In this document: positions 13,120-34,532 of the stretch, one piece after another
Numbering within the stretch: position 1 is the stretch's first letter
How the letters are laid out: the number at the start of each line of letters is the position of its first letter
Virus record (IMG/VR): IMGVR_UViG_3300046787_000286
Location: 62,001 to 126,000 of that record
Length of the DNA stretch: 64,000 nucleotides
Reading direction: 5' to 3' (one strand)
Position numbers and translations under genes: made by a program
Notes under the pieces: generated by a model
Seen by the model: the letters and a program-made list of their open reading frames with translations, nothing else
What the model was told of the DNA's origin: nothing
The model's database searches: none

Positions 13120-13125
13120 GTTAGT

Positions 13126-13835: not shown

Positions 13836-13872
13836 ACAACAATTATATATGACTTCTTTTAAAAAGTCAATA

Positions 13873-13895
13873 GAAAAGCCCACCGAAGTGGGCTT
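13873..13895 (-). terminator. intrinsic terminator
   Basis: AAGCCCAC-TTCG-GTGGGCTT-TTC. Confidence 0.8.
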
Positions 13896-13915
13896 AATAG
13901 TTAATCTAGTTTAGA

Positions 13916-14464: not shown

Positions 14465-14546
14465 GTAATTTCCTTTTAGTTAAAATGACTTGCGTCACTT
14501 TACATTATATATTCGTAGCTACGTTAAGTCAAGTAAAAACGACAAA

Positions 14547-15101
14547 TTACTTGTTGGTGTCTTCTACAGGAACCCATCCTAATTTAAAAAAGTCTTCTCG
14601 GATCTCATCTGTGACACAGCTTTCACTAACATACTTGACAATGTCCATGCCTTGCTCTAGAGCCGATGCTATCTGCTGTTCAGTAAGCTCGCCTTTAATT
14701 CCTGAGCAGTACCAATCAATGTAGTCCCCAGACTCTACCATGTCAGCAACAATACCCCCGGCATAACGCCAGGAGCAAGAGTAAGTTTGCCCTTTCAGCA
14801 GCGGCCACACATCATTCTTTTGCCAGTCTTGATTGCACAAGGCAGCATAGATATTTTGTGCATAGCTTTCACGAGACTTAGCTTTGTCGCAGATCCACTC
14901 AGTGCTACGAAGATCATATTCCAAATTGTTCTGTTGCCACTCGGGCTCGGCTTCTTTTTTCTTAACCATATCACTCCACACACGCTCCCGCTCAATGGTT
15001 TGTCGAACTTCTTCATCAGTGTTGGGATCGCGCCCTTCTGCTATTACATCGTCGATGCGACACTTGCTGTGAAAGGTACCTTTAATGGGACTTGAGTTCA
15101 T
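14547..15101 (-). CDS. hypothetical phage protein
   Basis: long ORF downstream of a tRNA and promoter. Confidence 0.7.
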   Translation of the reverse strand: MNSSPIKGTFHSKCRIDDVIAEGRDPNTDEEVRQTIERERVWSDMVKKKEAEPEWQQNNLEYDLRSTEWICDKAKSRESYAQNIYAALCNQDWQKNDVWPLLKGQTYSCSWRYAGGIVADMVESGDYIDWYCSGIKGELTEQQIASALEQGMDIVKYVSESCVTDEIREDFFKLGWVPVEDTNK

Positions 15102-15119
15102 ATAGCTAAGAAAGTTAAA

Positions 15120-15194
15120 TGGTGCGACTGGAGGATTACGATACCTCGACCCAGCGATTATGAGTCGCTTGCTCTTCCTCTGAGCTACAGTCGC
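15120..15194 (-). tRNA. trnI: tRNA-Ile2(CAT), lysidine type
   Basis: AGCGA-CTCATAA-TCGCT arm typical of Ile2; CCA; promoter at 15203-15231. Confidence 0.8.
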
Positions 15195-19813: not shown

Positions 19814-20602
19814 TTACTTTTTAAACACAGGAATTGGATTCATCTTGTGTATGTTGCGAGCACGAATCTCTCGATACTTCTTGAGTTGTGCTTTTTCTGT
19901 CTTGGTCAATGCTAGTGGATCCCATACACAGTTATCAGCTTGATCTAGTGCCATTGCATGTTCTAACTCTGGGTAAGTCATTCCTAACTGTGACTCGTCT
20001 GTGCGGTCGTCGTCCCATAACCCATCTGTTGGCGGTGCGTTAATGATCTCTTGCTCGATGCCCAATTCTCGAGCTATAGCCCACACTTCAGTTTTTAAGC
20101 AGTCGCCAATTGGGCTGATGTCTACACCGCCGTCGCCATACTTGGTAAAGAAGCCAACACCAAAGTCTTCTACTTTATTGCCAGTGCCTACAACAATACC
20201 GTTATGGCATTGTGCAATTTGATACAGCGTCATCATACGTAAACGAGCACGTGAGTTTGCTGATGCTAGCTTGTATGTATCATATGTGTCATCCTCGATT
20301 CCACAGAAAGGATCTACTTTCTTTTCGAATGCAGAAAACACTGGAGTTAAATCCATGCTCATGTGTGTAACGTTGTCAAACCGCTCTACTAGCCAACCGG
20401 CATGCAATGAGCTACGTTTGTCTAGCTTTTTATTCTGACGAATTGGCATTTGCACAACAATAGTTTTCAGCCCGGTCTTGGCACATAAAGTGCTAACAAC
20501 TGAGCTATCGATGCCGCCGGAGATACCAACAACTAGTGTAGTGACCTTTGCCTTCTTGGCATAGTCTTTGATCCATTTTGTAATTTGTGCGTGTAATTTC
20601 AT
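19814..20602 (-). CDS. nadE: NH3-dependent NAD+ synthetase
   Basis: SGGIDS PP-loop, NSRARLRM, GTGNKVE, FFTKYGDG, PTDGL...TDE...LG..Y; start MKLHAQ overlaps the queE stop. Confidence 0.88.
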   Translation of the reverse strand: MKLHAQITKWIKDYAKKAKVTTLVVGISGGIDSSVVSTLCAKTGLKTIVVQMPIRQNKKLDKRSSLHAGWLVERFDNVTHMSMDLTPVFSAFEKKVDPFCGIEDDTYDTYKLASANSRARLRMMTLYQIAQCHNGIVVGTGNKVEDFGVGFFTKYGDGGVDISPIGDCLKTEVWAIARELGIEQEIINAPPTDGLWDDDRTDESQLGMTYPELEHAMALDQADNCVWDPLALTKTEKAQLKKYREIRARNIHKMNPIPVFKK

Positions 20603-21459
20603 TATTTCCCCCAACCATTTCCCCACAAGTCGACGTGTAGTCGTGGACTGTAGTTGTAACCTTTGCTTAGTGCCCAATCTGCAACCTTAACACGGTTAGC
20701 AGCATAAGGAGTAACAACACCGCCTTGTGGCATTACATATACAACCCCAGTAAAGCCACCTGCTCTAAATTCTTTCACAGCACGTTCGACTTCGGCAAAG
20801 TGTTCTTCTGTTTCAACAACGAACTTAAGATACGTTGTACCATAGTCTTGATACATGCGTACAATTTCTGGGCGAATAGCTTCTTCCCACAGTTCACCAC
20901 TTGCACTTAGTTTAGCACTAACACTAAATGTAATTTCATTACCAGGACGATCACCCCAGTCTAACAAGTAGTCAATGAACTTAGGTTGCAAAGTTTGTGT
21001 GCCATTTGTTTCAAATGTAATATTCTTCAAGTCTGCCATATCCGGATGATCCAGCAGCTCTTGGTAAGCACGTTGCCAGCCTAACAAAGGCTCGCCACCT
21101 GTGATAACCAAATGTACATCGTTGCCGTTATCCTGTACCCAATGTTTGTTGGGAGTCAACGCCAACATTTGATCCACTAGGTCTTTGGTCTCAACCATCG
21201 GACTCAGTTCTTTAAACGCAGGATGCCAACTTGCGTAGCTGTCGCATCCAGTATTAACAAGGGGTAGACTAGTAAAATCCTTATACATCTCGATGTTCTT
21301 CGCCACGTCGTCTGCCTCTTTCGAAGTCTCGCCCGGCTTGCAACCGAAGCCCGAACAAGTAAAGTTACATCCGAAGGTTCGTAAGAATACTGAAGGAACG
21401 CCAACAAAGCGTCCTTCGCCCTGGGCAGAGTAAAAGAGTTCACTGATTTTTAATTTCAT
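20602..21459 (-). CDS. queE: 7-carboxy-7-deazaguanine synthase
   Basis: ELFYSAQGEGRFVGVPSVFLRTFGCNFTC...CDS, ITGGEP, ETNGT, RLHVDLWG. Confidence 0.92.
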   Translation of the reverse strand: MKLKISELFYSAQGEGRFVGVPSVFLRTFGCNFTCSGFGCKPGETSKEADDVAKNIEMYKDFTSLPLVNTGCDSYASWHPAFKELSPMVETKDLVDQMLALTPNKHWVQDNGNDVHLVITGGEPLLGWQRAYQELLDHPDMADLKNITFETNGTQTLQPKFIDYLLDWGDRPGNEITFSVSAKLSASGELWEEAIRPEIVRMYQDYGTTYLKFVVETEEHFAEVERAVKEFRAGGFTGVVYVMPQGGVVTPYAANRVKVADWALSKGYNYSPRLHVDLWGNGWGK

Positions 21460-21512
21460 AGTGTATTTAGACAAGATATTTTATATGCTATTATAATGGT
21501 TAAATAGATTTT

Positions 21513-22211
21513 ATGCAACCATTAAATTTACCAAAACTTATTGACAGTCCAGGCTTCATGTTAGCAGCCGATACTGTGTACTTTCAAAAATGGACAAAGT
21601 ATTTGTTCTTCAGTATTAAGAAACATGCACCTTGGGCGCACGTACATTTTCATGTGTTTGATCCAACTGCGGAAGATTTAGCCTGGTTGTCGGCAGCAGA
21701 TTGTAGTTATACATTTGAAACAACCCCATTAGATTATTGCCAGTCACACCAGGACAAGGTTGTGTATTGGTGCGCTGCAAGATATATTCGAACTACTGAA
21801 ATATACACTGATTCAACTCCTGTGATTAACCTAGATGCCGATAGCATTATGGTTTCTAGTTTAAGTCAAGAGCAATTTTTAAAAGACCTTGAACATAGCT
21901 GGGTACCAGTTGCTCCAAAGAGAGAAACTAGAAGTTTGTGTAGTGCGTTAGGTCTAGGGACTGATAACGGACGCTACGATGTTAGAAATGTATTACTAGA
22001 GGTATATAACAACTCTAGATTAACCTGGGCATTAGACCAACGACTATGCGATCAACTGCTAGACTCAGGCAAACTACAAGCAATGGACTTACGATACACA
22101 GATTTCAAAATGAAAGATACCTCTTACATCTGGACTGGTAAAGGAGACAGAGTTGATAAGTCTAGTTTCCAAAATGCACTGCGCCCGTATATAGGGTTAG
22201 TATCTCGCTAA
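21513..22211 (+). CDS. glycosyltransferase-like protein (GT-A, DAD motif)
   Basis: INLDADSI, DQ near the C-terminus, WTGKG; TTAAATA late motif upstream. Confidence 0.5.
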   Translation: MQPLNLPKLIDSPGFMLAADTVYFQKWTKYLFFSIKKHAPWAHVHFHVFDPTAEDLAWLSAADCSYTFETTPLDYCQSHQDKVVYWCAARYIRTTEIYTDSTPVINLDADSIMVSSLSQEQFLKDLEHSWVPVAPKRETRSLCSALGLGTDNGRYDVRNVLLEVYNNSRLTWALDQRLCDQLLDSGKLQAMDLRYTDFKMKDTSYIWTGKGDRVDKSSFQNALRPYIGLVSR

Positions 22212-22994
22212 TGATTCTTTAAGTCCTAGCAACGGAAGTTTATATTTTTCTAATTTGTCACCGTTGCCTGTGTAACTCATTCCTTGCTCAGTAACTTCGA
22301 TAAGAGATTTGTCTAGATTGTGTGTGTCGCAGTAGATACCTAATGTCTCGCTAAGGGTATACTTTTCAGCATACACACAGTTAATGTCTCGATCGATTAT
22401 GTTTCCATTGAGTACTGCATTAATGACCGTAGTAAAATCTTCGGCGCTGATCATATCAAATTTTCTATCAGTGATACTGAACTTATTGCCTTGCGCTAGA
22501 GAGGAATGTAATTTTTTAAGTAATCTAGCATTGTCTTCAGACGAGTCGAAACACCCAAACAATCGCAAATTATAACACATAGAATGTGTCCACAAGCATC
22601 TAGATATAAGATTTTTACTCATCCCGTAACTTTGTTGCGGTGAACAAGTGAATATGCTAGATTCTCTAGCACAATCAATTGGCTGACTAATATCAAACTC
22701 TGCACCTGTGCCGATATTAATTAATGTATCAAACTCACGACTATTAGACATGAGATTCATCACAGACAGAAGATTACTATTAACTATGTTACGATCTTCG
22801 GCCCATGGTGTGTTGCGACCAGCTGCACCACAATGGATTACTGCATCATATCTATTATGTTGAAAATGATTGTGTGTTGCTTCTGCGTCAGACAAGTCAA
22901 GTTCCTGTCGCGTAAGTGCAACGACATTGTATTGTAAATGTCTAGCAAGGTACGAGCCGAGGAATCCCCCGGCCCCTGTAATCAAAACCTTCAA
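22197..22994 (-). CDS. NAD-dependent sugar epimerase/reductase (extended SDR; YerF-like position)
   Basis: TGAGGFLG, YGMSK. Confidence 0.85.
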   Translation of the reverse strand: MKVLITGAGGFLGSYLARHLQYNVVALTRQELDLSDAEATHNHFQHNRYDAVIHCGAAGRNTPWAEDRNIVNSNLLSVMNLMSNSREFDTLINIGTGAEFDISQPIDCARESSIFTCSPQQSYGMSKNLISRCLWTHSMCYNLRLFGCFDSSEDNARLLKKLHSSLAQGNKFSITDRKFDMISAEDFTTVINAVLNGNIIDRDINCVYAEKYTLSETLGIYCDTHNLDKSLIEVTEQGMSYTGNGDKLEKYKLPLLGLKESLARY

Positions 22995-24751
22995 CGAATT
23001 CTTTCGTAGTTAAAGTAAGGATTGCCAGCTGCAAATTCTTCGTCGCTAACTAGTGGTGATTGATCGTTGATTGGGCGACCTTTCTCTAGCTTGGGCTCAA
23101 TTTGCACACCTGGGTGAATCTTGATTTCGATGATCCTACGTCCAGGTGCAAGCAATTCTGCGTTAATTTGATCTAGTGATGTAACTAGTTTGTAATCAAA
23201 GTCGAATGCTTCAGCAATTTTCTTAAAGTTAGGACGCCCCGGACCATTTTCTGTAGCAGCGTGTCGCCCATCCATGTAAGCATCTTGGAATTGACAAATC
23301 ATGCCTAGGCGATTGTTGTTAAACACAATGACTTTAATGTCTAGATCATATTCTTTGACTGTTTGCAATTCTTGCAAGTTCATCTGAATGCCGCCGTCAC
23401 CGTTAGAACAAATGTGTTGACGGTCTGGCGCTACTAATGCTGCACCAATTGATGCTGGCAACGCATATCCCATTGCATAATGCCCGGAACTTGTCATTAA
23501 CAACTGATCTTGGTCGCGATGGAAAGACTGGTAAACCCAACAGTGGTTGGCACCTGCATCCGTAGTAATAACAGCATTGGGTTCTGCTACTTTTTGTAAT
23601 TTTTCAACAACAAGATACGGACTCATTGTATCGTATTGCTTGCTATTTGAACTTGTATCTTTGTTAAAATACTTTGCTTTAAGTCCTTGACAATACTTTG
23701 GCCAGTCAGCATCAAACTTAGGCTTCTCTACTCCACGCAAGGCTTTCGAAAGATTGCGCAAATCAAAATGTAATCCTTTATAGTTTGCAGGATCTAGCTT
23801 TTCTAACTCGGCAGGATCGAGATCAACACACAATATTTCTGCATTGGGTGCAAAGTTTGCAGGGTTACCTGAACGCTGACGGTTGTCTAAACGTGATCCT
23901 AGCACAAGGATCTTGTCTGCGTTTTGAATTGCATTATTGCCTCCACGATTACCATATACACCAAAGTGACCAATGTAGTTAGGTGCTTCGTGATTAAAGT
24001 AGTTGAGTGCTGCCCAGGTAGCAACAAACGGAATTTTATTTGATTGCAACCAGCGTTCGAGTTCTACTTGTTGACCAGCAAGTCCAACACCTGCACCAAA
24101 GATAATCAATGGGCGATGTGCGCCTCCCAGGAATTGTTGGATTACTTTTCCTACTTGTTCAGGGGAGATACCTGTATCAACTGCTAACCACTTATCAGAG
24201 TCTGGCAATAACATAGTGCTATCTTCCATTTCTGCATTTTGCAAGTTCATTGGAATGTCAACTAGCACTGGGCCCATGCGACCTGAATATGCTTCTTCTA
24301 CTGCACGTTTTAATTCACGACGCATATCGTCATGTGTGGTTACGTTAACAGCATATTTGCAAACAGGTTTAACCATGCTAACAATATCCATTTGTTGGAA
24401 ACCTGCTTGACGCACAGCAGCACCACGATAGAGCTTTTGTTCTTCGTAGTTGACTTGTCCAGTAATATGCAAGCTAGGAATAGAATCATAATAACCACAC
24501 GCAATACCTGTGATTAAGTTAGATGCTCCTGGCCCTGATGTTGCCATTGACACACCTAGTTGCCCATTGGTACGCCATAATGCATCAGCTGCCATTGCTG
24601 CGGCTTGTTCGTGCTGGAAGCAAATAACATCCATGCCCTCCTCTAGTGCAATTTGATCAATTAAGAATGTGATTGCACCACCTTGCACTTGGAACACTTT
24701 GTTTGCACCAATTGCTTTTAAAAACTTAGCTACGTATTGACTACCTTTCAT
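22991..24751 (-). CDS. ThDP-dependent acetolactate-synthase-like enzyme (YerE-like)
   Basis: HEQAAAMAADA, TSGPGASN, GDGGIQMNLQEL...NN ThDP motif; sits among NDP-sugar genes. Confidence 0.88.
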   Translation of the reverse strand: MKGSQYVAKFLKAIGANKVFQVQGGAITFLIDQIALEEGMDVICFQHEQAAAMAADALWRTNGQLGVSMATSGPGASNLITGIACGYYDSIPSLHITGQVNYEEQKLYRGAAVRQAGFQQMDIVSMVKPVCKYAVNVTTHDDMRRELKRAVEEAYSGRMGPVLVDIPMNLQNAEMEDSTMLLPDSDKWLAVDTGISPEQVGKVIQQFLGGAHRPLIIFGAGVGLAGQQVELERWLQSNKIPFVATWAALNYFNHEAPNYIGHFGVYGNRGGNNAIQNADKILVLGSRLDNRQRSGNPANFAPNAEILCVDLDPAELEKLDPANYKGLHFDLRNLSKALRGVEKPKFDADWPKYCQGLKAKYFNKDTSSNSKQYDTMSPYLVVEKLQKVAEPNAVITTDAGANHCWVYQSFHRDQDQLLMTSSGHYAMGYALPASIGAALVAPDRQHICSNGDGGIQMNLQELQTVKEYDLDIKVIVFNNNRLGMICQFQDAYMDGRHAATENGPGRPNFKKIAEAFDFDYKLVTSLDQINAELLAPGRRIIEIKIHPGVQIEPKLEKGRPINDQSPLVSDEEFAAGNPYFNYERIR

Positions 24752-24760
24752 GGTATCTCC

Positions 24761-26080
24761 TTATTTGTATAAACTTAAGAAACCGCGAACAATTTTACCA
24801 ATGTAGGCAATTTGTTCGGGTGTGATTACAGGGCTAGTACCATGGAAGTAAGTATGGGTCATAGCATGTGTTGCGTTAGGGAAATTGTCCTTGGCCAGCT
24901 GCGGGTCCATTAAATGGCTATAAGCAGGCTGCAACATAATATTGCCAGCAAAGTAAGGACGAGTCTGGATCAAGTTCTCTTCTAGGTAATCCACAATGTC
25001 ACTGCGAGTAAACGGTGCATCTTTTCTAATAGTTAACGGGAACGCAAACCAGCTGGGATCACTCTTGGCAGTTGCTCTTGGCAAGTGGAAGAACTCTTCA
25101 TAGTCCTTGTAAATGTCAAACAGCAGTTGATAGTTACGTCGACGCAATGCGTGAATTTCTGGTAACTTTTTCAACTGTTCAAGACCCATAGCACACTGAA
25201 CTTCAATTGGTTTCATGTTGTAACCAATTTCGTCGTATACGTATTTGTGATCAAAAATTTCATCAGGTAAAGTAGGAATCCAGTTATTAAAACGATTGCC
25301 ACAAGTACCACACTTCAATTTGTTTGCTTCTGGCCCAACACAATAGCAGCCACGCCCCCATTCACGGAAGCTACGCAAGATAACATCTGTATTGGCATCG
25401 TTAGTTGCAACGTATCCACCTTCGCCCATGGTCATGTGATGTGCTGGATAGAAACTGCACGATGCCATTAAACCGTAACTGCCCAATGGCTTGCCATCAT
25501 ATGTGCTACCTAACGCATCACAGCAATCTTCTAGAAGAATCAAATTGTGTTGTTTCACTAATTCCATTAATCGATCCATTACTGGAGGATTACCTAGCAC
25601 GTGAGCAAACGTAATAACACGAATATCAGGGTTAGCTAATAAGGTTGACTCAACTTGATCTAAATCTAAGTTAAGTGTATCAAGTTCAATGTCTACAAAC
25701 ACTGGCTCAAAACCAACTTGCAATGTTGGGTTTAACGTTGTTGGAAATCCAGCAATAGGCATTAGAACTTTAGTGCCCTTGGGTAGGTTGTAGCCACGCT
25801 TGGATGTCAACGCTGACATCATTAATAAGTTACTAGATGATCCTGAGTTTGTTAAGATACCTTTGTCTTTACCAAAATACTTCGGAAACTCACGTTCAAA
25901 CTTTAGGCCATCGTCGCCCATAACAAGCCAACCCTTGAGCAAACTTGCGACCCCTGCTACAAATTCTTTTTCGTCAAAATATGACCCGGCATAGTTGACA
26001 AAATCTTTGCCAGCTACCCATGTTTTATTTTCTTGCTTTTGTTTAATGTGCTCTTGCACTAATTTAAGAATTTCTTCCAT
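24761..26080 (-). CDS. rfbH: CDP-4-keto-6-deoxyglucose 3-dehydratase (E1, RfbH/DdhC)
   Basis: NSGSSSNLL, SFYPAHHMTMGEGG (His in place of Lys), RDC-like GRGCYC...C, DHKYVYDEIGYN. Confidence 0.88.
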   Translation of the reverse strand: MEEILKLVQEHIKQKQENKTWVAGKDFVNYAGSYFDEKEFVAGVASLLKGWLVMGDDGLKFEREFPKYFGKDKGILTNSGSSSNLLMMSALTSKRGYNLPKGTKVLMPIAGFPTTLNPTLQVGFEPVFVDIELDTLNLDLDQVESTLLANPDIRVITFAHVLGNPPVMDRLMELVKQHNLILLEDCCDALGSTYDGKPLGSYGLMASCSFYPAHHMTMGEGGYVATNDANTDVILRSFREWGRGCYCVGPEANKLKCGTCGNRFNNWIPTLPDEIFDHKYVYDEIGYNMKPIEVQCAMGLEQLKKLPEIHALRRRNYQLLFDIYKDYEEFFHLPRATAKSDPSWFAFPLTIRKDAPFTRSDIVDYLEENLIQTRPYFAGNIMLQPAYSHLMDPQLAKDNFPNATHAMTHTYFHGTSPVITPEQIAYIGKIVRGFLSLYK

Positions 26081-26802
26081 TAGATAATACCTACTTCTTT
26101 ACTGATAAATTGCATTAAATTGATAACTTGTTGACTGCCACGGCTAGCATGGAAGTGTAAGATACGAGCGTCTTTAAGATTGATCCCATTCCAGTTATTG
26201 TGTTCAATAACTTCTTCAGGAGACAATGTTCTGAGTTTCATTGCCTGGTACGCCAGCCACGGATGTAAACGATCAGTGTCCGGTATGTCTTGTTTCCAGA
26301 ACATAGTGTTGTGTCGTAGTTGATCAAACCCCCAGTGTTGATCAGGATGACCTTCTCGTTGTTCCCACAACTGATCCCCTAGATCCCAAATATCCTGGCT
26401 CATAGTATGAGGGTAGTACTGAATGTCATCATTAAAGTAATTTGTAAATTCTTTATATGATTTGGGGTCCGTGTAATTGAATAAGCGATATTCCTTGAAC
26501 TTACTATCAAACAATTTAGTAGGTTGGGTCATCAGTGTATCGGCACCAGCCCAGAAAATATTACACGGCTCTTTGTGCCAAAGTTCCTTGATTGCATTCC
26601 AGTTTGCTACTGTATACTCATCGTTGTTTTTTACAGGTTCTGTCCAAAGCACTGCTTCAAACGGCTCCTCAACAAACTTCTGAAAGCTAGCCACACTTAG
26701 GTCATACATTTGCCTGTAGAACGTATAAAGATCAGTTCGTTTTTGATGTAGCCATCCGTCCTCAATTGGACGGACAGCGCAAACTAGATAATTTTTTACC
26801 AT
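26080..26802 (-). CDS. glycosyltransferase-like hypothetical protein
   Basis: in the sugar operon; FWAGADT and ILHFHASR motifs resemble GT-A enzymes. Confidence 0.5.
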   Translation of the reverse strand: MVKNYLVCAVRPIEDGWLHQKRTDLYTFYRQMYDLSVASFQKFVEEPFEAVLWTEPVKNNDEYTVANWNAIKELWHKEPCNIFWAGADTLMTQPTKLFDSKFKEYRLFNYTDPKSYKEFTNYFNDDIQYYPHTMSQDIWDLGDQLWEQREGHPDQHWGFDQLRHNTMFWKQDIPDTDRLHPWLAYQAMKLRTLSPEEVIEHNNWNGINLKDARILHFHASRGSQQVINLMQFISKEVGII

Positions 26803-27776
26803 ACAAAGTTCTCAATGTAATATTGTACTATCTCTTCTAGGGCTGTGTCAAAGACTGATTGCGGGTACCATCCCAGCCCCTTGAGTTTCGAGTCATCGAT
26901 TGCGTACCTTACATCTTGCCCCATACGCTGACTATCAAAAATATAATCTTCCCAATTATCCGAAGCATCTTCACCTTTGTAGATTTTTAGAAGCTTCTTG
27001 ATAACTTCTCGGTTGGGCATTTCGGCATTTCCTGAAATATTGTATATCTCATTAGTAACACCTGATTTGATAATAGTTACAACAGCAGTAGCAGTATCAG
27101 CAGCATGCAACCAAGTACGCACAGGTTTTCCTTGATCGTGAAGATCAATTTTCTTACCTAGCGTTAGGTATTTGATTGACTTAGGGATAAGTTTTTCAAC
27201 ATACTGTCCTGTGCCATAGTTATTGGTTGGTCGGACAATAACATACTTTAAGCCATATGTTCTAGCCCACGCAGTAATAAGCATGTCGGCAGCAGCTTTA
27301 CTTGCTGAGTATGGATTACTAGGCTTTAACAAATCTGTTTCTGAATGAGTACCTGCTTCAATGTCGCCGTAAACTTCGTCTGTTGAGAAATGTAAAAATA
27401 CAGGTTGCTTGTGTCGCGGCTGTTCTTTGATTAGTTCTAGTAGATGATGCACACCATTTACATTACTGTGCAAAAATACTCCACTGCTCATAATACTATT
27501 ATCAACGTGAGTTTCTGCAGCCATGTTAATAACATAGTCGCAATCGTGTAACCGATCTAGTTCATTGATATCAGTCTTGATAAACTTAAATGTTTTGTAT
27601 TTTTTAAATTTTTCTAAGAAGTGTTCATTACTAGCATAGGTACATTTATCTACACCTATAACATACCAACCCCGAGCTAGTAATTCGTGAGTCACATGCG
27701 ACCCCATAAACCCAAGGCATCCAGTTACATAAACTATCTTCTTCAAATCTTTCTCGCTTTGACTAATAAATGCCAT
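26796..27776 (-). CDS. rfbB: NDP-glucose 4,6-dehydratase (RmlB-like)
   Basis: TGCLGFMG, AAETHVDNSI, STDEVYG, PYSASKAA, NNYG. Confidence 0.9.
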   Translation of the reverse strand: MAFISQSEKDLKKIVYVTGCLGFMGSHVTHELLARGWYVIGVDKCTYASNEHFLEKFKKYKTFKFIKTDINELDRLHDCDYVINMAAETHVDNSIMSSGVFLHSNVNGVHHLLELIKEQPRHKQPVFLHFSTDEVYGDIEAGTHSETDLLKPSNPYSASKAAADMLITAWARTYGLKYVIVRPTNNYGTGQYVEKLIPKSIKYLTLGKKIDLHDQGKPVRTWLHAADTATAVVTIIKSGVTNEIYNISGNAEMPNREVIKKLLKIYKGEDASDNWEDYIFDSQRMGQDVRYAIDDSKLKGLGWYPQSVFDTALEEIVQYYIENFVW

Positions 27777-28522
27777 CCGAGATATTCTCGAACAGCTTCA
27801 CGCATTGCATCTGGCATAGCAGCAAACCATGGCTCTAATTCATAGCGGCCTGCCTTATACGCATCTACATTATACATAAAGCAATGATCCTGACGTACAC
27901 GTTCTATATGCCAGCCTGGACCCAACAACTCAGGAATTTCTTCTTTGGTGAAACTTTTAGCATACGGGCAACCAGCTTGTGCTTCGTATTGGTCAAGCCC
28001 TTTATAAATCATTGCTTGCTTCCAGGAATTCTTCGCGTATACCATGAAGCGGAACTCTCCACCAGGATTAAGCAACGAGTGTACATTGTTGATTATAGTA
28101 TTGATTGCTGGAAAGTGATGAATAACACCATAGCTGTAAACAAGATCAAATTTTCCCAGGTTTGCAGTGTCGGTGCTATTACTTGCATCAATGTTATGGA
28201 ATTCTCCATCGAGCCCTAGTACTTCAAAACGTTGTCGAGCAATTTCCACACTTTGGTCACTGTAGTCAATGCCTACATATTCTGCACCGTGCTTGGCAAA
28301 TTCTTCGCCGTCGCTAGCAATACCACATCCAACTTCTAAAACACGTTTGCCTTGCCACAAATGAAATCCAGCAAATTCTGGAATGTGCGGCTCCACTTGA
28401 TATCGACGTTCGCTAACTTGATGGAAAAACTTTGGTGTTCCAAACTCAGCTGTGCCGTGTTTGATATTACAAGGCTGTGCATTCCAATATTTTTTAATTC
28501 GTGCCTCTAACTCGTCACTCAT
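27743..28522 (-). CDS. class I SAM-dependent methyltransferase
   Basis: VLEVGCGIASDG, FDLVYSYGVIHH, LNPGG. Confidence 0.85.
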   Translation of the reverse strand: MSDELEARIKKYWNAQPCNIKHGTAEFGTPKFFHQVSERRYQVEPHIPEFAGFHLWQGKRVLEVGCGIASDGEEFAKHGAEYVGIDYSDQSVEIARQRFEVLGLDGEFHNIDASNSTDTANLGKFDLVYSYGVIHHFPAINTIINNVHSLLNPGGEFRFMVYAKNSWKQAMIYKGLDQYEAQAGCPYAKSFTKEEIPELLGPGWHIERVRQDHCFMYNVDAYKAGRYELEPWFAAMPDAMREAVREYLGWHLLVKARKI

Positions 28523-29349
28523 GCTGCACCCATCTTTGTCATTGGTATTTGGAATTGTTTGCATTGATTATTGGTATCATTTTCTTGTAGTTTAATCCAC
28601 GGGTCTTGTTTACCAGACTTGACGTTTGCCCACCAGGTGATATCCAAGTTCTTAGATGCCATGTAATCAGATAGCTTTTCAACGTCTTGCATTCTACGCA
28701 AGTGCCAACTCACGTGATGAAAATCTCTCGAGTCTGATGGATTGCCTTCGTACATAACACGATTTTTGTAAGTGTCATCATTGTTATTGCCAGTGAGATC
28801 ATGACGATCGTGTGTGACCCAAACAGGAACCCTTTCGAAAATATCCAACAAGTAAGCCTGTTGACTTAGCCAAGCATCAGAAATCTGATGTGGACTTAGA
28901 TATCCCAAATGGTCTAACCATTCTCGAGGGACGATAGGGAAAATTGAATATGGATGATCGTTGTGTGTATGAACAGCCAAACATTTAAACTCCCCTGTGT
29001 GTTTAGCAATAACCTTGTCCCACCCAGCGGTGTCCATCATTGCATCGTCGTTCCAGAACATTAACCAATCAGCGTCAGACGACACTGCAAGAGCGTTAAC
29101 ATATTCGTTTAATCTATTGTATCCAAGTCTTTCAAAAACTTGTGCATCATAGTTGACTTTTTTCTCAATTAACCACGGCTCCAATTCGTTTTGGAAATGT
29201 TCGATGCCAGGTGTATCATCGTGATCGAACCCTAGTAATAGTTGAACTGTGTTTAAATCAACTGCTCGGTTAATTAAACTCATTACGCTGCGGCTTAGCG
29301 CATCTGTGCGTCCTCGTGTGGGTAGTAAAATTGCAATGCTATATTTCAT
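28519..29349 (-). CDS. GT2-family glycosyltransferase
   Basis: LLPTRGR, FDHDD, WNDD motifs. Confidence 0.75.
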   Translation of the reverse strand: MKYSIAILLPTRGRTDALSRSVMSLINRAVDLNTVQLLLGFDHDDTPGIEHFQNELEPWLIEKKVNYDAQVFERLGYNRLNEYVNALAVSSDADWLMFWNDDAMMDTAGWDKVIAKHTGEFKCLAVHTHNDHPYSIFPIVPREWLDHLGYLSPHQISDAWLSQQAYLLDIFERVPVWVTHDRHDLTGNNNDDTYKNRVMYEGNPSDSRDFHHVSWHLRRMQDVEKLSDYMASKNLDITWWANVKSGKQDPWIKLQENDTNNQCKQFQIPMTKMGAA

Positions 29350-29386: not shown

Positions 29387-29884
29387 TTACGCAAATAGAT
29401 CTTCGTTCCATTCACGGTGGCCTTCTCGATACGCCATGTTGCTTTGTGTTTCGCGCACTTCAACACGATAGCACCATAAACGATCTGCTTCGCCAGGTCC
29501 CCACATCTCAGGAATGTAAACACCATTTACATACTTGTACAGCATGTCGCTTAGTGCTTCACAACCTAGTGCAGGTAGCACAACGATCTTGGCCATGTTC
29601 TTCTCTTGTAGCAGTTTAAATGTTTCCAACTCTGGATCATCTTGTGCAACAATAAGCGTATGGTCGAATTGGTCTTCCAGTGTCTTCTTTAGTTCCTTGA
29701 GACCGCCGTAGTCTGCGGCCCAGTTACGAACGTCTAGATCATTGGTTCCAAAATAGAACTTCATTGAAAAAGCGTAGCCGTGGATTAAGTTACAGTGACT
29801 ATCAGCACGCCATTGTCTGTAAGCAACAGGGAAGGCGTTGTGATACTCTTTTGTAGAGGTGTATTTGTATTGGATGGGTGTCAT
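29387..29884 (-). CDS. queD: 6-carboxy-5,6,7,8-tetrahydropterin synthase
   Basis: HCNLIHGY (CxxxHG), FDHT, VEVRET. Confidence 0.88.
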   Translation of the reverse strand: MTPIQYKYTSTKEYHNAFPVAYRQWRADSHCNLIHGYAFSMKFYFGTNDLDVRNWAADYGGLKELKKTLEDQFDHTLIVAQDDPELETFKLLQEKNMAKIVVLPALGCEALSDMLYKYVNGVYIPEMWGPGEADRLWCYRVEVRETQSNMAYREGHREWNEDLFA

Positions 29885-29894
29885 GCTTGTTTCT

Positions 29895-29957
29895 CCTATG
29901 TTAATTTTAGCATAGGCAGCAGAATTTGTATAGCGGGATGATGCTCTAAAGGCCGCT
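29895..29957 (-). promoter_or_regulatory. preQ1-I-like riboswitch candidate upstream of queD
   Basis: AGCGG-CCTTTAGAGCATCATC-CCGCT-ATACAAATTCTG, followed by a CCTATG/CATAGG hairpin over the RBS. Confidence 0.55.
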
Positions 29958-30081
29958 TAGAGAAATACTTATGCTAGTTCCACTAGATGGTATTTAGAAG
30001 CCGGATAATGTTCCTGTAGCCACTCCAATAACCCTTCTTGGTTTGGCAACTGAATTTCTCCAGTTTTGTTTGTTATCACAA

Positions 30082-30483
30082 TCATTTTGGTAACTGATAG
30101 CCGCCACTTTTGTAGTTTGCTTGCCCGTGAATAACACCACGCACACCGCCGATTGGGTTAGCACAGTCACCGGTTTTGCGAGGAATCAGATGCACATGCG
30201 GATACATTACTGTTTGGCCAGCAGCTTCGCCCATGTTGATTCCAACGTTGAATGCATCACACATGCCTTCATCAACTAGTTTCTGGCCATGATAAAATGC
30301 ACGTTTAAAACAGTGTTCGATTGTGGCGCCATTGTTTGTTACAGGCACAAACAACAAGTGTCCCTTAGCAACAGGAAATCTATCTTGAAATACTGCGACT
30401 TGTAGATCACTAAGTTCGTGAACTTTTAAATCCCAAGGCGCTACACCTGCTTGTGCGGCCTTGTCTAATGTATTGTATTTCAT
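30082..30483 (-). CDS. HIT-family hydrolase
   Basis: PVAKGHLL, AAGQTVMYPHVHLIPR (HxH triad region). Confidence 0.9.
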   Translation of the reverse strand: MKYNTLDKAAQAGVAPWDLKVHELSDLQVAVFQDRFPVAKGHLLFVPVTNNGATIEHCFKRAFYHGQKLVDEGMCDAFNVGINMGEAAGQTVMYPHVHLIPRKTGDCANPIGGVRGVIHGQANYKSGGYQLPK

Positions 30484-32288: not shown

Positions 32289-32990
32289 TTAACGTGGTGC
32301 AAACTCTTGTTGAAGTTTGATGTTGTCAAAGAACTCTTTCTTTACCGAAGCATCTGTCTTAAATGCACCATTAAGAACTGTCGTCTGGGTGAGACTAGAG
32401 TGAGCCATAATACCACGATTCTCACAGCATCCATGGGTAGCTTGGATATAAACTGCAACATCTTTGGATCCAGTTGCAAATTCAATTTCACGAGCGATGT
32501 CCATACAGAGTTCTTCTTGTAGTGTTCCTCGTCGAGCACACCATTGCGCAATTCGAGTGTATTTCGAAAGGCCAATGAGTTTTGGTCCAGCAATAATGCC
32601 AATATAAGCCACACCCGTAACAGGCTGGTGATGATGCGAACACATGCTCTTAAGCTCTGAACGCACAACCAACATACCATCGTAGGCTCCTTCTGTATCA
32701 TTGGGGAAAGCCGTAGCATTAGGGCTCTCCTCGTATCTGCCAGCCATGATTTCATATACATACATCTTTGCTAAACGGCGTGCTGTACCCATTGAGTTTG
32801 GATCGTTTTGTCGATCAATAATCAAACTGTCTAGCACACCTTCAAACTTGCCTGTGAGCTCATCCACTAGCAAGTCTTTTTCTTTATCAGTAATAAAGTC
32901 ACTGATGTTATCACCTGCCCAGTAACGCTTGTCTGCGTCAGTTAATCGTTTGCGAATTACTTGTGATAGGTTTAAACTGTTGTCTGTCAT
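32289..32990 (-). CDS. folE: GTP cyclohydrolase I
   Basis: SMCSHHHQP, GLSKYTR, QEEL, HGCCENRG. Confidence 0.95.
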   Translation of the reverse strand: MTDNSLNLSQVIRKRLTDADKRYWAGDNISDFITDKEKDLLVDELTGKFEGVLDSLIIDRQNDPNSMGTARRLAKMYVYEIMAGRYEESPNATAFPNDTEGAYDGMLVVRSELKSMCSHHHQPVTGVAYIGIIAGPKLIGLSKYTRIAQWCARRGTLQEELCMDIAREIEFATGSKDVAVYIQATHGCCENRGIMAHSSLTQTTVLNGAFKTDASVKKEFFDNIKLQQEFAPR

Positions 32991-32991: not shown

Positions 32992-33585
32992 TTAGTCCTT
33001 AATTGTGATGGTTCTTAAATCTGGGTATTCAACTAGCTTGGGTTTAACTGGAAACTCTTTAATACCTTGCAGTAGTGCAATTCCTTTGACTGCTTCTTCT
33101 GGTGTAGGTTTATAGTGATAACCAACCCTAAACTCTTTCTGTTGTTCCCACGGTGATATATTTAGATCGCGACCGTCGTATCGCATACGAATTATTACAT
33201 CATACGCTGCTTTGTCATCTAACAGTATAGCACCACCACGGCCTATATGTAAAGGCTTTGTGTGCCCAAAGCTCAAACATTGCATTTGCCCTTCGCGATA
33301 CATGTTCTTTTCTAGTCTACGTGCTGAATCCCAAATTCGAGTTTTTCTAAACTTGTATTCGCCTACCCACTGTTCATTACCTTCGTAGTAGTATTGAATT
33401 TTCAACTTGTGCATTAGCATCGGAATACTCAAGTAAGTAAAAGGTGTGAACGCACAAAACTCAACCTTGTCATATCTCATACAAAGCTCAATAGCGTGAG
33501 TGCAACAATCGGTCATGATTGCATACGGTGCGCCAGTATATTCTGCTAGTGCGATTTCAAATCGATTAATATCGTCAAATGTCAT
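32992..33585 (-). CDS. short DegT/DnrJ-type PLP aminotransferase-like protein
   Basis: DCCTHAIEL, DSA, SFGHTKPL..GRGGAIL. Confidence 0.75.
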   Translation of the reverse strand: MTFDDINRFEIALAEYTGAPYAIMTDCCTHAIELCMRYDKVEFCAFTPFTYLSIPMLMHKLKIQYYYEGNEQWVGEYKFRKTRIWDSARRLEKNMYREGQMQCLSFGHTKPLHIGRGGAILLDDKAAYDVIIRMRYDGRDLNISPWEQQKEFRVGYHYKPTPEEAVKGIALLQGIKEFPVKPKLVEYPDLRTITIKD

Positions 33586-34532
33586 TTGTTATACCAATTC
33601 CATGCATGTTGAATCATTGCATCTAAATCGTGGTGACGCCAAGCTCCAGCTACTAAATCGAACTTAGCCGAAGTAGCAGTTAACGTTGCAGGATCTCCAG
33701 ACCGTGCTGCACTGATATGAATATTAGGACGCTTACCGGTAATTTCTGTTGCACGTAGTATCACCTGCTGAACTGAGTGTCCATGATTTGATCCAAGATT
33801 ATAGATACCTGCAGGAATCTTGTGATAGATCGCCAAAGCATGTGCTCTAGCAATGTCTTCAACATGAACATAATCACGAACGCAGGTACCGTCAGCAGTA
33901 GGGTAATCCATCCCATAAACCTCAAATGTAGATCCATCCTTTGCAGCCTCTAAGAATTTAGCAATTAAATGAGTAGCACCTGGCTCTTGTCCATGGCAGC
34001 CCTTTGGGTCAGCACCACAGGCATTAAAATAACGAAAGCTAACGTAGTCCAAGCCATATGCTCGATGATATGACTTTAGAATCATGTCAATCATATACTT
34101 GCTTTCGCCATAAGGACTAATAGGTAATTCCGGGAACGATTCGTCTATTGGATTCAGCACTGGCTCGCCGTATGTAGCTGCTGAAGAACTAAAAATAAAT
34201 TTAGTCTTAGGTAAACTCTTGCGAACAATGTCCAACAACTTTAGAGTTTTAACCACATTGTTGTTGTAGTATTCACTAGGATCTTTTACACTTGGTCCAA
34301 CAAGACTAGTGCCAGCACAGTGAATAATAGCATCAGGTTGTTTTGCAATAATCCAGCTTAGAGCCACATCGCTAGCAAAGTCCTGGTACAAGTATCCGTC
34401 GCACACGCCTAACAAATGCTTAGGCGGATCTCTACGATCGATGCCGTACACCACGTGCCCTGCGTCTTTCAACAACAGGGCAGTTTGTCCGCCAATGTAG
34501 CCGGCTGAGCCAGTAACAATTACAGTTGACAT
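33582..34532 (-). CDS. galE: UDP-glucose 4-epimerase
   Basis: GSAGYIG, SSSAATYG, PYGESK, RYFNACG, DGTCVRDYVHV. Confidence 0.9.
   Translation of the reverse strand: MSTVIVTGSAGYIGGQTALLLKDAGHVVYGIDRRDPPKHLLGVCDGYLYQDFASDVALSWIIAKQPDAIIHCAGTSLVGPSVKDPSEYYNNNVVKTLKLLDIVRKSLPKTKFIFSSSAATYGEPVLNPIDESFPELPISPYGESKYMIDMILKSYHRAYGLDYVSFRYFNACGADPKGCHGQEPGATHLIAKFLEAAKDGSTFEVYGMDYPTADGTCVRDYVHVEDIARAHALAIYHKIPAGIYNLGSNHGHSVQQVILRATEITGKRPNIHISAARSGDPATLTATSAKFDLVAGAWRHHDLDAMIQHAWNWYNK

What the first reader, a model, noticed from the sequence alone, without database searches (positions are those of the whole stretch)
29885..29972. preQ1-class I-like riboswitch candidate controlling queD, possibly sensing a different deazaguanine
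Seen: P1 AGCGG/CCGCT, a 16-nt loop containing UUUAG and ending in C, then an AUA-led A-rich tail whose UUCUG can pair with loop UAGAG. It is followed by a CCTATG/CATAGG hairpin that overlaps the AGGAG RBS of queD. Established: the B. subtilis preQ1-I aptamer is AGAGG-UUCUAGCUACAC-CCUCU-AUAAAAAACUAA. Inference: phage feedback control of its DNA-modification pathway. If the phage makes CDG or DG rather than preQ1, the ligand specificity could be new.
Basis: partly seen in the sequence, partly recalled or inferred. Interest (0 to 1): 0.75.

Follow-up and report, generated by a model that had tools for sequence, protein, structure and literature searches.

The report
Phage QueD leader pseudoknot, riboswitch candidate
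Just upstream of a phage queD-like gene lies a small, strongly conserved RNA pseudoknot that looks like an undescribed riboswitch-type regulator; it resembles the preQ1-I riboswitch in outline but is not a member of that family.

Summary
Taken alone they are no better than chance: fold z-scores are -0.04 and -0.65, and Rfam gives no hit even at E<=10. Comparison with relatives changes the picture. The same about 55-nt element precedes the QueD-like gene in every related viral contig with enough upstream DNA (76 of 81 loci; 100 distinct versions). It occurs once per phage genome and stays with the gene while the neighbouring genes change. P1 is 99.6% paired, with recurrent compensatory changes at three of its five pairs. 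A different loop-tail helix covaries and gives an H-type pseudoknot: P1, L1 NCUU.., P2 of about 6-9 bp, L2 UC, L3 WUAYAAAYUC. Promoter-like -10 boxes end 7-9 nt before P1, and the start codon lies 28-41 nt after the motif. The 3' strand of P2 shares 2-4 nt with a hairpin that covers the ribosome-binding site. My best reading is a new, phage-restricted riboswitch candidate, similar to preQ1-I in topology, in its invariant L2 cytidine and in its A-rich L3, but not a preQ1-I member. The ligand and the ON/OFF logic are unknown. FolE, QueD-like and QueE-like genes are present; canonical QueC and DpdA/TGT were not found.

The parts
29966..29971 (-). -10-like box TAAGTA, ending 8 nt before P1; the likely promoter element for the leader transcript
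   Evidence: In 30 of 46 distinct homologous upstream regions, a TAAATA/TAAGTA/TATAAT-type box ends 7-9 nt before P1, and several loci have a full TTGACA-N17-TGTATAAT. Inferred; no 5'-end data.
29953..29957 (-). P1 5' strand, AGCGG
   Evidence: Pairs with 29932-29936. 99.6-100% paired; variants ACCGG/CCGGT, AGAGG/CCTCT, AGTGG/CCACT, TGCGG/CCGCA, ATCGG/CCGAT.
29947..29952 (-). L1: variable first nucleotide, then conserved C-U-U, then a variable-length extension (CCUUUA here; UA can extend P2 in this sequence)
   Evidence: The second L1 nucleotide (C) is invariant and the next U is at least 90% conserved. Total loop length is 13-19 nt.
29939..29946 (-). P2 5' strand: G(A)GCA, an unpaired U, then CA (P2b 29942-29946; P2a 29939-29940)
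   Evidence: P2a is CA:UG in 96 and CG:CG in 4 of 100 distinct sequences, never mixed. P2b own-loop/own-tail duplex averages -5.31 against -4.21 +/- 0.13 kcal/mol for permuted partners (0 of 10000). There are 46 distinct duplexes, with 429 Watson-Crick and 24 G-U pairs.
29937..29938 (-). L2: U-C; the C (29937) directly abuts the 3' strand of P1
   Evidence: The C is invariant in all 56 distinct rows of the unbiased alignment A3. It sits in the same position as the preQ1-I specificity cytidine (PMC10622847).
29932..29936 (-). P1 3' strand, CCGCU
   Evidence: See the P1 5' strand.
29922..29931 (-). L3: AUACAAAUUC (consensus WUAYAAAYUC), 10 nt with three invariant A and an invariant U-C at its 3' end
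   Evidence: Conservation in A1 and A3. It is conserved even where the downstream platform lacks a -35/-10 arrangement.
29913..29921 (-). P2 3' strand: UG, an unpaired C, UGC, C(UA)
   Evidence: It shares 2-4 nt (29913-29916) with the 5' arm of the hairpin over the ribosome-binding site.
29895..29916 (-). Hairpin CCUAUG - 10-nt loop - CAUAGG; its 3' arm covers AGG of the Shine-Dalgarno sequence
   Evidence: 100% paired in 57 distinct type-1 platforms but nearly invariant; only U-G x4 and G-U x1. The C-to-U change at its first pair coincides with a G-to-A change in the loop partner of P2 (L055, L195, L245).
29904..29932 (-). Sigma-70-type promoter-like element that overlaps the RNA element: TATACA (29927-29932), 17 nt, TGcTAAAAT (29904-29912)
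   Evidence: Found by the consensus scan. TGnTAnnnT is kept in 60 of 62 type-1 hairpin loops, with a -35-like hexamer at 16-18 nt in 58 of 62. The extended -10 pattern is in 69 of 87 platforms of all types. Activity was not tested.
29893..29897 (-). Shine-Dalgarno sequence AGGAG
   Evidence: Read from the sequence. The motif-to-ATG distance is 28-41 nt in about 70 of 75 loci and 24-40 nt in the gene-blind set.
29387..29884 (-). Regulated gene: QueD-like T-fold protein (PTPS / 6-carboxytetrahydropterin synthase family), 165 aa
   Evidence: Pfam PF01242 8e-15; phrog_2389 3e-35; best PDB match 7v0f, a CPH4 synthase. 44% identical to the QueD of Pseudomonas phage Iggy, which sits in a QueE-QueC-QueD-FolE-DpdA cluster.
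32289..32990 (-). GTP cyclohydrolase I (FolE), the first enzyme of the same pathway, 2.4 kb upstream on the same strand
   Evidence: Pfam PF01227 2.5e-38; NCBIfam FolE models around 1e-39. Found within 3 kb of the QueD-like gene in 30 of 80 loci.
20602..21474 (-). QueE-like radical-SAM protein, 290 aa, 8 kb downstream on the same strand
   Evidence: Weak hits, all below cut-off, to all five NCBIfam QueE models (about 1e-10). In the relative G001 its homologue (E about 1e-18 to 1e-20) follows motif, QueD-like, Rieske protein and a 97-aa ORF on one strand.

Best explanation
This is the 5' leader of the phage QueD-like mRNA, and it folds into a small H-type pseudoknot. The order of parts is: P1 (5 bp); L1 (NCUU plus 0-6 nt); P2 5' strand; L2 (UC); P1 3' strand; L3 (WUAYAAAYUC); P2 3' strand. 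Shown here: the two helices covary; the unpaired junction nucleotides are nearly invariant; the element occurs once per genome and always precedes this gene; and it sits at a fixed distance from the start codon. Inferred: it is a metabolite-sensing aptamer, that is, an undescribed riboswitch candidate so far seen only in phages. Its ligand probably has a guanine-like face (a 7-deazaguanine or a pterin intermediate of the FolE-QueD-QueE route) that the invariant L2 cytidine reads. Also inferred: forming P2 withdraws nucleotides that otherwise close a hairpin over the ribosome-binding site, so a stabilised pseudoknot would open that site (translation ON). The direction of the switch is the weakest step. 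A conserved sigma-70-like extended -10 element lies between the pseudoknot and the ribosome-binding site. It may give a second, unregulated transcript, or it may act as a pause site.
For: Conservation and specificity. There is one R1 hit of at least 51 bits in each of 76 of 81 loci chosen by protein homology alone; the other 5 lack upstream DNA. There is one hit of 56-69 bits per phage genome, and the next best is at most 14 bits. Of 80 gene-blind pattern hits in viral contigs, 79 have a complementary P1 and 75 have the QueD-like protein as the first ORF. Synteny on both sides varies. The motif is kept where the protein is only 34-38% identical.

Structure. P1 is 99.6-100% paired, with double changes at 3 of 5 pairs and 0 of 500 shuffles reaching the score; RNAalifold finds P1 unaided. 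On a tree of the adjacent ORF, the P1 state changes at least 15 times and P2a at least 5 times. P2a is A-U or G-C and never mixed. For P2b, a loop paired with its own tail beats permuted partners in 10000 of 10000 trials, and 24 G-U pairs tie the structure to this strand as RNA.

Leader context. -10-like boxes end 7-9 nt before P1. The motif-to-ATG gap is 28-41 nt, even with N-terminal extensions.

Switch anatomy. P2 and the hairpin over the ribosome-binding site share 2-4 nt, and a C-to-U change there is compatible with both pairings. The computed unpaired probability of the Shine-Dalgarno sequence is 0.35 with the strands free and 0.67 with the pseudoknot strands engaged.

Pathway. FolE, QueD-like and QueE-like genes are present.
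Against: There is no ligand-binding data and no experimental 5' end. The metatranscriptome evidence is contigs only: they have no direction, and their drop-off coincides with the end of sequence conservation. In the single sequence, thermodynamic folding is no better than in shuffles. The hairpin over the ribosome-binding site is invariant, so covariation cannot confirm it. Thirteen short-platform variants show no computed change in Shine-Dalgarno accessibility, and blocking upstream partners raises accessibility almost by construction. A conserved promoter-like element inside the platform could bypass the RNA and explains part of the conservation of L3 in type-1 loci. Cultured phages with homologous QueD have no such leader. 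Small pseudoknots in phage leaders can also be protein operators.
Confidence: 0.55

Rival explanations
1. It is a true but divergent preQ1-I riboswitch that binds preQ1 or preQ0 and represses queD by feedback.
For: It shares several features with preQ1-I as described in PMC10622847: an H-type pseudoknot, a 5-bp P1 closed by two G-C pairs, an invariant C immediately 5' of the 3' strand of P1, and an L3 that begins AUA and is A-rich. The regulated gene belongs to the preQ0 pathway.
Against: No match to Rfam PreQ1, preQ1-II or preQ1-III even at E<=10, in five variants. The real P2 is 6-9 bp, L2 is 2 nt instead of 4-6, L1 is 4-10 nt with a variable first nucleotide, and the Shine-Dalgarno sequence lies 15-30 nt beyond P2 and is not inside it. 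The phages show no QueC, QueF or TGT that would make or use preQ1.
Confidence: 0.12
2. It is a protein-binding translational operator. A phage or host protein, possibly the QueD-like enzyme itself or a phage translational repressor, recognises the pseudoknot, as gp32 does with the T4 gene 32 leader pseudoknot or S15 with rpsO.
For: The same facts that support a structured leader fit this reading too. Pseudoknot operators are known in phage and bacterial mRNAs (from established knowledge; rpsO/S15 appears, PMC3985624). The element is restricted to one phage clade, which would fit co-evolution with a clade-specific protein.
Against: The unpaired nucleotides are nearly invariant across leaders whose proteins have diverged to 34-38% identity, and across very different genomic neighbourhoods. 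That is more typical of a small-molecule pocket. No candidate RNA-binding gene travels with the motif.
Confidence: 0.17
3. The conservation is mainly at the DNA level. The region is a promoter (a -35 in 'L3', an extended -10 in the 'hairpin loop') with flanking inverted repeats that serve as operator sites.
For: TATACA-17-TGcTAAAAT was found by the scan. TGnTAnnnT is kept in 60 of 62 type-1 loops, with a -35-like hexamer in 58 of 62, and the extended -10 pattern is in 69 of 87 platforms. The hairpin arms flank the -10 and never vary.
Against: Two interleaved inverted repeats with recurrent compensatory changes and 24 G-U wobbles (which would be A-C on the other strand) point to RNA on this strand. 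The loop covaries with the promoter 'spacer', which a promoter does not require. Type-2 and short platforms keep L1, L2, L3 and P2 without a -35 at the right spacing. A separate -10-like box lies just upstream of P1. The promoter probably exists alongside the RNA element and does not replace it.
Confidence: 0.08
4. It is a constitutive structural element of the mRNA 5' end, serving as a stabiliser or translation enhancer, with no sensing function.
For: P1 would lie within a few nucleotides of the inferred 5' end. From established knowledge, 5'-terminal stem-loops protect mRNAs from decay.
Against: A stabiliser needs only a stem. Here about 15 unpaired positions are invariant or nearly so, and a second helix that overlaps the hairpin over the ribosome-binding site covaries.
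Confidence: 0.08

Closest known systems
preQ1-I riboswitch (Rfam RF00522; types I-III)
   Same: Small H-type pseudoknot in a 5' leader. P1 is 5 bp and ends in two G-C pairs. A conserved cytidine is the last L2 nucleotide before the 3' strand of P1. L3 begins (A/U)UA and is A-rich. It is associated with a gene of the GTP-to-preQ0 pathway.
   Different: No covariance-model match. P2 is 6-9 bp (interrupted) instead of 3-4 bp. L2 is 2 nt instead of 4-6. L1 is 4-10 nt with a variable first nucleotide where preQ1-I has a conserved U. L3 is 10 nt with an invariant YUC at its 3' end. The Shine-Dalgarno sequence lies outside P2, and the anatomy suggests ON rather than OFF. It has been seen only in phage contigs.
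Other H-type pseudoknot riboswitches (SAM-II, SAM-V, preQ1-II, guanidine-III, fluoride)
   Same: Compact pseudoknot aptamers with conserved loop nucleotides lining a helix. The pyrimidine-rich L1 next to a longer P2 recalls the L1-P2 triplex of SAM-II and SAM-V (from established knowledge).
   Different: No Rfam match to any of them, and the gene association is different.
T4 gene 32 leader pseudoknot and rpsO/S15 operator
   Same: A pseudoknot in an mRNA leader (of a phage in the first case) upstream of the ribosome-binding site, used for translational control.
   Different: Those are protein operators of nucleic-acid-binding or ribosomal proteins. Here the gene encodes a metabolic enzyme, and the unpaired nucleotides are conserved far beyond the helices.
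THF-II (folE motif) and THF-I riboswitches
   Same: Leader RNAs that control pterin-branch genes downstream of GTP cyclohydrolase I; their ligands have the same 2-amino-4-oxo face as guanine.
   Different: Different folds, no Rfam match, and here the element precedes the QueD-like gene and not folE.

Membership tests
preQ1-I riboswitch (RF00522) | Scores at or above the gathering threshold with the Rfam PreQ1 covariance model | tested here: not met
   No PreQ1 hit at gathering score over the 64-kb window. None at E<=10 on 29800-30150, nor on four divergent homologous loci.
preQ1-I riboswitch (RF00522) | H-type pseudoknot with a 5-6 bp P1 | tested here: met
   P1 is 5 bp, 99.6-100% paired, and covaries. 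A loop-to-3'-tail helix is supported by covariation.
preQ1-I riboswitch (RF00522) | Highly conserved cytidine in L2 (the specificity base) next to the 3' strand of P1 | tested here: met
   The C at window 29937 is invariant in 56 distinct rows of the unbiased alignment. Its role in ligand recognition was not tested.
preQ1-I riboswitch (RF00522) | Conserved uridine at the start of L1 that contacts the ligand | tested here: not met
   The first L1 nucleotide is C, U or A (35/27/21 and others among 100 sequences). The conserved nucleotides are the following C-U-U.
preQ1-I riboswitch (RF00522) | Short A-rich L3 (about 6-8 nt) with a conserved adenine next to P2 | tested here: inconclusive
   L3 is WUAYAAAYUC, with three invariant A, but it is 10 nt long and ends in an invariant U-C before P2.
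preQ1-I riboswitch (RF00522) | Short P2 (3-4 bp) whose 3' strand is or abuts the Shine-Dalgarno sequence or a terminator | tested here: not met
P2 is 6-9 bp with an internal mismatch or bulge. The Shine-Dalgarno sequence lies 15-30 nt downstream.
preQ1-I riboswitch (RF00522) | Binds preQ1 (or preQ0) selectively | not testable with these tools
   Needs in-line probing, ITC or SPR.
preQ1-II / preQ1-III riboswitches | Match to the Rfam models RF01054 / RF02680 | tested here: not met
   No hits at E<=10.
Riboswitch (generic cis-acting metabolite sensor) | Conserved structured element in the 5' UTR of a metabolic gene, with covarying helices and conserved unpaired junction nucleotides | tested here: met
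Riboswitch (generic cis-acting metabolite sensor) | Transcribed as part of the mRNA leader | tested here: inconclusive
   -10-like boxes end 7-9 nt before P1 in 30 of 46 upstream regions. G-U wobbles imply RNA on this strand. Metatranscriptome contigs of relatives cover the leader but carry no direction or 5' ends.
Riboswitch (generic cis-acting metabolite sensor) | Expression platform with pairings that exclude each other | tested here: inconclusive
   The 3' strand of P2 and the 5' arm of the hairpin share 2-4 nt. One substitution is compatible with both pairings. The accessibility calculation is suggestive only.
Riboswitch (generic cis-acting metabolite sensor) | Direct, selective binding of a small molecule that changes expression | not testable with these tools
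   No biochemical data.
Sigma-70 extended -10 promoter (overlapping element) | TGnTAnnnT with a TTGACA-like hexamer 16-18 nt upstream | tested here: met
   Window: TATACA-17-TGcTAAAAT. 60 of 62 and 58 of 62 type-1 platforms keep the two parts. Promoter activity was not tested.

The most novel reading that the evidence does not exclude
This is a new riboswitch class found only in phages. It is a preQ1-I-like pseudoknot with a different pocket that senses an intermediate of the FolE-QueD-QueE route other than preQ1 (for example 7-carboxy-7-deazaguanine, CPH4 or dihydroneopterin triphosphate) and switches translation of the phage QueD-like enzyme ON. A nested host-type promoter provides unregulated expression at another stage of infection.
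Probability: 0.3. Interest if true: 0.85.

Novelty: new variant of a known kind. Interest (0 to 1): 0.7.

Why it matters
To my knowledge, riboswitches encoded by phages are rare, and those reported are copies of bacterial classes. This element matches none of the 4227 Rfam families and was not found in the searchable literature. In the species-representative prokaryote genomes, one strict pattern scan found a single real instance, on a 5.8-kb MAG contig that may be phage DNA. If it binds a metabolite, it would add a new aptamer fold variant for guanine-like or pterin-like ligands. It would also show how a jumbo phage meters a 7-deazapurine or pterin pathway during infection, and it would provide a very small (about 55 nt) sensor for engineering. 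It is also a useful caution: the single-sequence resemblance to preQ1-I was right about the kind of element and wrong about the pairing.

Tried and rejected
- Rfam at gathering score on the window, and at E<=10 on the region and on four homologues: nothing at the motif.
- Single-sequence MFE folding: not better than shuffles.
- A repeated promoter, terminator or repeat element: rejected, one copy per genome. No terminator-like site in the region.
- Presence in bacteria: a strict pattern scan of species-representative genomes gave 64 hits, near my own rough estimate of the chance level, and only L118 is real. This covers that pattern only. A covariance-model search of Polynucleobacter relatives could not be run.
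- Motif in cultured phages with homologous QueD (ACP17, Iggy, Xanthomonas X1): absent, because the genes abut their upstream neighbours.
- My early idea that the His-to-Tyr changes at two Zn-ligand positions mark a non-QueD function: dropped, because Iggy's QueD shares them and sits in a full deazaguanine cluster.
- My early conclusion that QueE is absent: corrected.
- Metatranscriptome reads to map the 5' end: only contigs of relatives, not decisive.
- A column-wise count of P2b on MAFFT and CM alignments was not possible, because indels shift the register. I used duplex energies with a permutation control instead.
- First two motif-finding scripts: one too strict and one too loose; replaced.
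Full report
**1. What is in the window.** All genes around the finding run on the minus strand, so the candidate reads 29972 down to 29885.
- P1: AGCGG (29957-29953) pairs with CCGCU (29936-29932).
- Loop: 16 nt, ending in C.
- Tail: begins AUACAAAUUCUG.
- Hairpin: CCUAUG (29916-29911) pairs with CAUAGG (29900-29895) and covers AGG of the AGGAG ribosome-binding site (29897-29893).
- Start codon: 29884-29882.
- Downstream ORF: 165 aa, a PTPS/QueD-family protein (Pfam PF01242, 8e-15; phrog_2389 'QueD-like', 3e-35; best PDB relative is a 6-carboxytetrahydropterin synthase).
- Neighbours: the upstream gene is a HIT-family protein, and GTP cyclohydrolase I (FolE) lies 2.4 kb upstream.

**2. Is it more than chance in this one sequence?** No. 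The minimum-free-energy fold is no more stable than dinucleotide shuffles (z = -0.04 and -0.65). Rfam finds no riboswitch at the gathering score, and nothing relevant at E<=10 on the 351-nt region.

**3. Comparative evidence.** The window lies in a 214-kb viral record that is about 62% complete. The QueD-like protein has at least 593 relatives in viral contigs, and I fetched 80 at 87-98% identity. A nearly identical leader precedes the gene in every locus with enough upstream DNA.
- My own filter found it in 75 of 81 sequences, 52 of them distinct.
- A covariance model (R1) found exactly one hit of at least 51 bits in 76 of 81 loci. The other five have fewer than 10 nt of upstream sequence.
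- In five large phage records, one of them 354 kb and 100% complete, the model hits once per genome at 56-69 bits. The next best hit is at most 14 bits. It is therefore not a general promoter, terminator or repeat.
- A gene-blind pattern scan of viral contigs returned 80 loci. Of these, 79 have a complementary P1 and 75 have the QueD-like protein as the first ORF. The exceptions are contig ends, one single-mismatch P1, or a small inserted ORF.
- The genes on either side vary (HIT, FolE and a glycosyltransferase-like gene are present in only some loci), but the motif always stays with the QueD-like gene.
- It is kept where the protein is only 34-38% identical to the window's, so the RNA core is more conserved than the protein.
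- The same strict pattern in species-representative prokaryote genomes gave 64 hits, which is near my own rough estimate of the chance level. Only one is real: L118, at the end of a 5.8-kb MAG contig.

**4. Structure.**
- P1 is paired in 100% of 52 distinct sequences (A1) and 99.6% of 56 (A3, the unbiased alignment built by the model).
- Three of its five pairs show changes on both sides, none shows a one-sided change, and no shuffle reaches the observed score.
- Across 100 distinct instances the P1 variants are AGCGG 73, TGCGG 10, ACCGG 9, AGAGG 6, AGTGG 1 and ATCGG 1, each with the matching 3' strand. Two single-mismatch intermediates exist (L040, L172).
- RNAalifold predicts P1 unaided.
- On a quick ML tree of the adjacent ORF, the P1 state changes at least 15 times. 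The changes are therefore recurrent, although tree resolution is limited and recombination is possible.

A different helix is supported.
- The CA that lies two nucleotides before the 3' strand of P1 pairs with the UG that follows the invariant YUC of the tail. This pairing is CA:UG in 96 and CG:CG in 4 of 100 distinct sequences, never mixed, with at least 5 changes on the tree.
- The helix continues, across a mismatch or bulge, between the loop (GGCAU, GACGY, ACG.CAU and others) and the next 4-8 tail nucleotides.
- Indels shift its register, so I scored it by duplex energy. A loop with its own tail averages -5.31 kcal/mol. Permuted partners average -4.21 +/- 0.13, and none of 10000 permutations did as well.
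- There are 46 distinct duplexes, with 429 Watson-Crick and 24 G-U pairs (a first version on 52 sequences is). The G-U pairs tie the structure to RNA of this strand.

The fold is therefore an H-type pseudoknot:
- P1: 5 bp
- L1: N-C-U-U plus 0-6 nt
- P2: about 6-9 bp, interrupted
- L2: U-C
- L3: W-U-A-Y-A-A-A-Y-U-C

Invariant unpaired positions cluster at the helix junction: the L1 C, the L2 C, three A's in L3 and the L3 U-C.

**5. Leader context.**
- In 30 of 46 distinct upstream regions, a -10-like box (TAAATA, TAAGTA, TATAAT and similar) ends 7-9 nt before P1. Several loci have a full TTGACA-N17-TGTATAAT. In the window it is TAAGTA at 29971-29966. Transcripts would then begin essentially at P1. 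This is inferred, not shown.
- The distance from the motif to the start codon is 28-41 nt in about 70 of 75 loci, even where the protein has an N-terminal extension.
- Contigs of relatives in three freshwater metatranscriptomes cover the ORF and the leader up to about 29981 and nothing beyond. They carry no direction, and the drop coincides with the end of sequence conservation.

**6. Expression platform.** In the window the 3' strand of P2 (29921-29913) shares 2-4 nt with the 5' arm of the hairpin that covers the ribosome-binding site.
- That hairpin is paired in all 57 distinct type-1 platforms but is almost invariant (U-G x4, G-U x1). Covariation therefore neither proves nor disproves it.
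- One detail fits a shared 'switching' sequence. The C-to-U change at the first hairpin pair (L055, L195, L245) accompanies a G-to-A change in the P2 partner, so the nucleotide stays paired in both structures.
- A partition-function estimate gives a Shine-Dalgarno unpaired probability of 0.35 with the strands free and 0.67 with the pseudoknot strands engaged, higher in 91 of 97 sequences. This hints at an ON switch.
- The calculation is biased towards that result, and 13 short-platform variants show no effect.

**7. A complication: a nested promoter-like element.**
- The scan found TATACA-17-TGcTAAAAT on the minus strand. The -35 lies in L3 and the extended -10 lies in the hairpin loop.
- Among 62 type-1 platforms, 60 keep TGnTAnnnT and 58 keep a -35-like hexamer at 16-18 nt.
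- The extended -10 pattern occurs in 69 of 87 platforms of all types and ends 12-21 nt before the ATG.
- This looks selected. It may give a short transcript that bypasses the pseudoknot, or it may act as a pause signal.
- It cannot explain the covariation between the loop and the 'spacer', the G-U pairs, or the conservation of L1, L2, L3 and P2 in platforms without a properly spaced -35. I therefore treat it as an overlapping feature and not as the explanation.

**8. Pathway context.**
- No TGT/DpdA family member (Pfam PF01702, or Iggy's DpdA used as query) was found in the window's record or in four relatives, one of them complete. No canonical QueC (PF06508) was found in the window's record, in the complete relative G001 or in G002; the incomplete G003 and G004 gave only marginal partial hits (20-24 bits) in 220-320 aa frames, which I did not follow up.
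- I first thought QueE was missing too. A search with Iggy's QueE corrected that. A QueE-like radical-SAM gene follows motif, QueD-like, a Rieske protein and a 97-aa ORF on one strand in G001 and G002 (E about 1e-18). A weaker homologue lies at window 20602-21474, next to a NadE-like PP-loop amidotransferase at 19814-20677.
- The phage can therefore plausibly make CPH4 and 7-carboxy-7-deazaguanine. What happens next is unknown.
- The QueD-like family has Tyr at two of the three Zn-ligand His positions (FP[CV]AYR and CxxxHGY in all 80). The QueD of phage Iggy shares this and sits in a QueE-QueC-QueD-FolE-DpdA cluster. The substitution is therefore a trait of the subfamily and not a sign of lost function.
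- Cultured phages with a 41-53% identical QueD have no leader and no motif.

**9. Comparison with known families.** The features that define preQ1-I come from PMC10622847: an H-type pseudoknot, a 5-6 bp P1, an A-rich L3 in the minor groove of P1, a conserved L2 cytidine as the specificity base, a conserved L1 uridine and L3 adenine, and a P2 that involves the Shine-Dalgarno region.
- Met here: the fold type, the P1 length and the invariant L2 C.
- Partly met: L3.
- Not met: the model match, the conserved first-position L1 U, the short P2 and the Shine-Dalgarno sequence inside P2.

It therefore works like a small pseudoknot riboswitch and resembles preQ1-I, but I do not file it as a member. No description of it turned up in five full-text searches.

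**10. Verdict.**
- It is partly wrong: the P2 pairing, family membership and the DNA-modification pathway.
- I put about 0.85 on a functional structured cis-acting RNA, about 0.55 on the metabolite-sensing reading, and less on the ON direction and on any particular ligand.

Noticed in passing
window 2550-15194 (minus strand): A dense array of 30 tRNA genes and a permuted (two-piece type) tmRNA at 13528-13812 (91 bits). This is unusual cargo and a possible host clue, since from established knowledge permuted tmRNAs occur in alpha- and some beta-proteobacteria and in cyanobacteria.
   Followed up: no
window 19814-21474 (minus strand): A QueE-like radical-SAM ORF (290 aa) sits directly before a NadE-like PP-loop amidotransferase (287 aa; NAD synthase Pfam 3e-52). 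Next to QueE, and with no canonical QueC, the NadE-like enzyme might amidate 7-carboxy-7-deazaguanine. This is speculation.
   Followed up: partly
window 22197-29349 and 32992-34532 (minus strand): A large sugar-modification cluster lies around and downstream of the QueD-like gene. It contains a glycosyltransferase-like gene, a SAM methyltransferase, GDP-mannose-dehydratase-like and RmlD-like epimerases or reductases, two aminotransferases and an acetolactate-synthase-like TPP enzyme. In L205 a KdsA-like gene follows the QueD-like gene.
   Followed up: partly
window 29387-29884 (minus strand) and all 80 homologues: The QueD-like family has Tyr where QueD/PTPS has two of its three Zn-binding histidines (FP[CV]AYR; CxxxHGY). 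This is also true of the QueD of Pseudomonas phage Iggy.
   Followed up: partly
window 29904-29932 (minus strand): A conserved sigma-70-like promoter with an extended -10 is nested inside the RNA element. Its -35 lies in L3 and its -10 in the hairpin loop, which would put a start point at or inside the Shine-Dalgarno sequence.
   Followed up: partly
L205:6300-6800 (minus strand of the locus); L043, L064, L212: In a few relatives another ORF sits between the motif and the QueD-like gene (for example a 113-aa ORF in L205; gaps of 293-760 nt in the others). The motif then precedes the first gene of the unit.
   Followed up: partly
L040:2918-2970 and L172 (minus strand, near 326): Two leaders carry a single mismatch in P1 (UGCGG/CCGCU and AGCGG/CCGGU). 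They look like intermediates of the compensatory changes seen elsewhere.
   Followed up: no
G000 contig positions 22268-31910 (outside the window) and window 749-1237 (+): The phage record holds about 11 radical-SAM ORFs, most in one cluster. The 354-kb relative has a similar number.
   Followed up: no
L102 (2.4-kb contig binned to an uncultured Polynucleobacter MAG), 2362-2389: A truncated copy of the motif lies at a contig end in a freshwater betaproteobacterial MAG. It may be mis-binned phage DNA, or a weak host hint. The closest cultured QueD-like protein is from Acidovorax phage ACP17.
   Followed up: no
window 29994-30170 (minus strand): A 58-aa GTG ORF overlaps the end of the HIT gene and runs into the intergenic region. 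It has no family match and is probably not a gene, which leaves a 197-nt intergenic region before the QueD-like gene.
   Followed up: no
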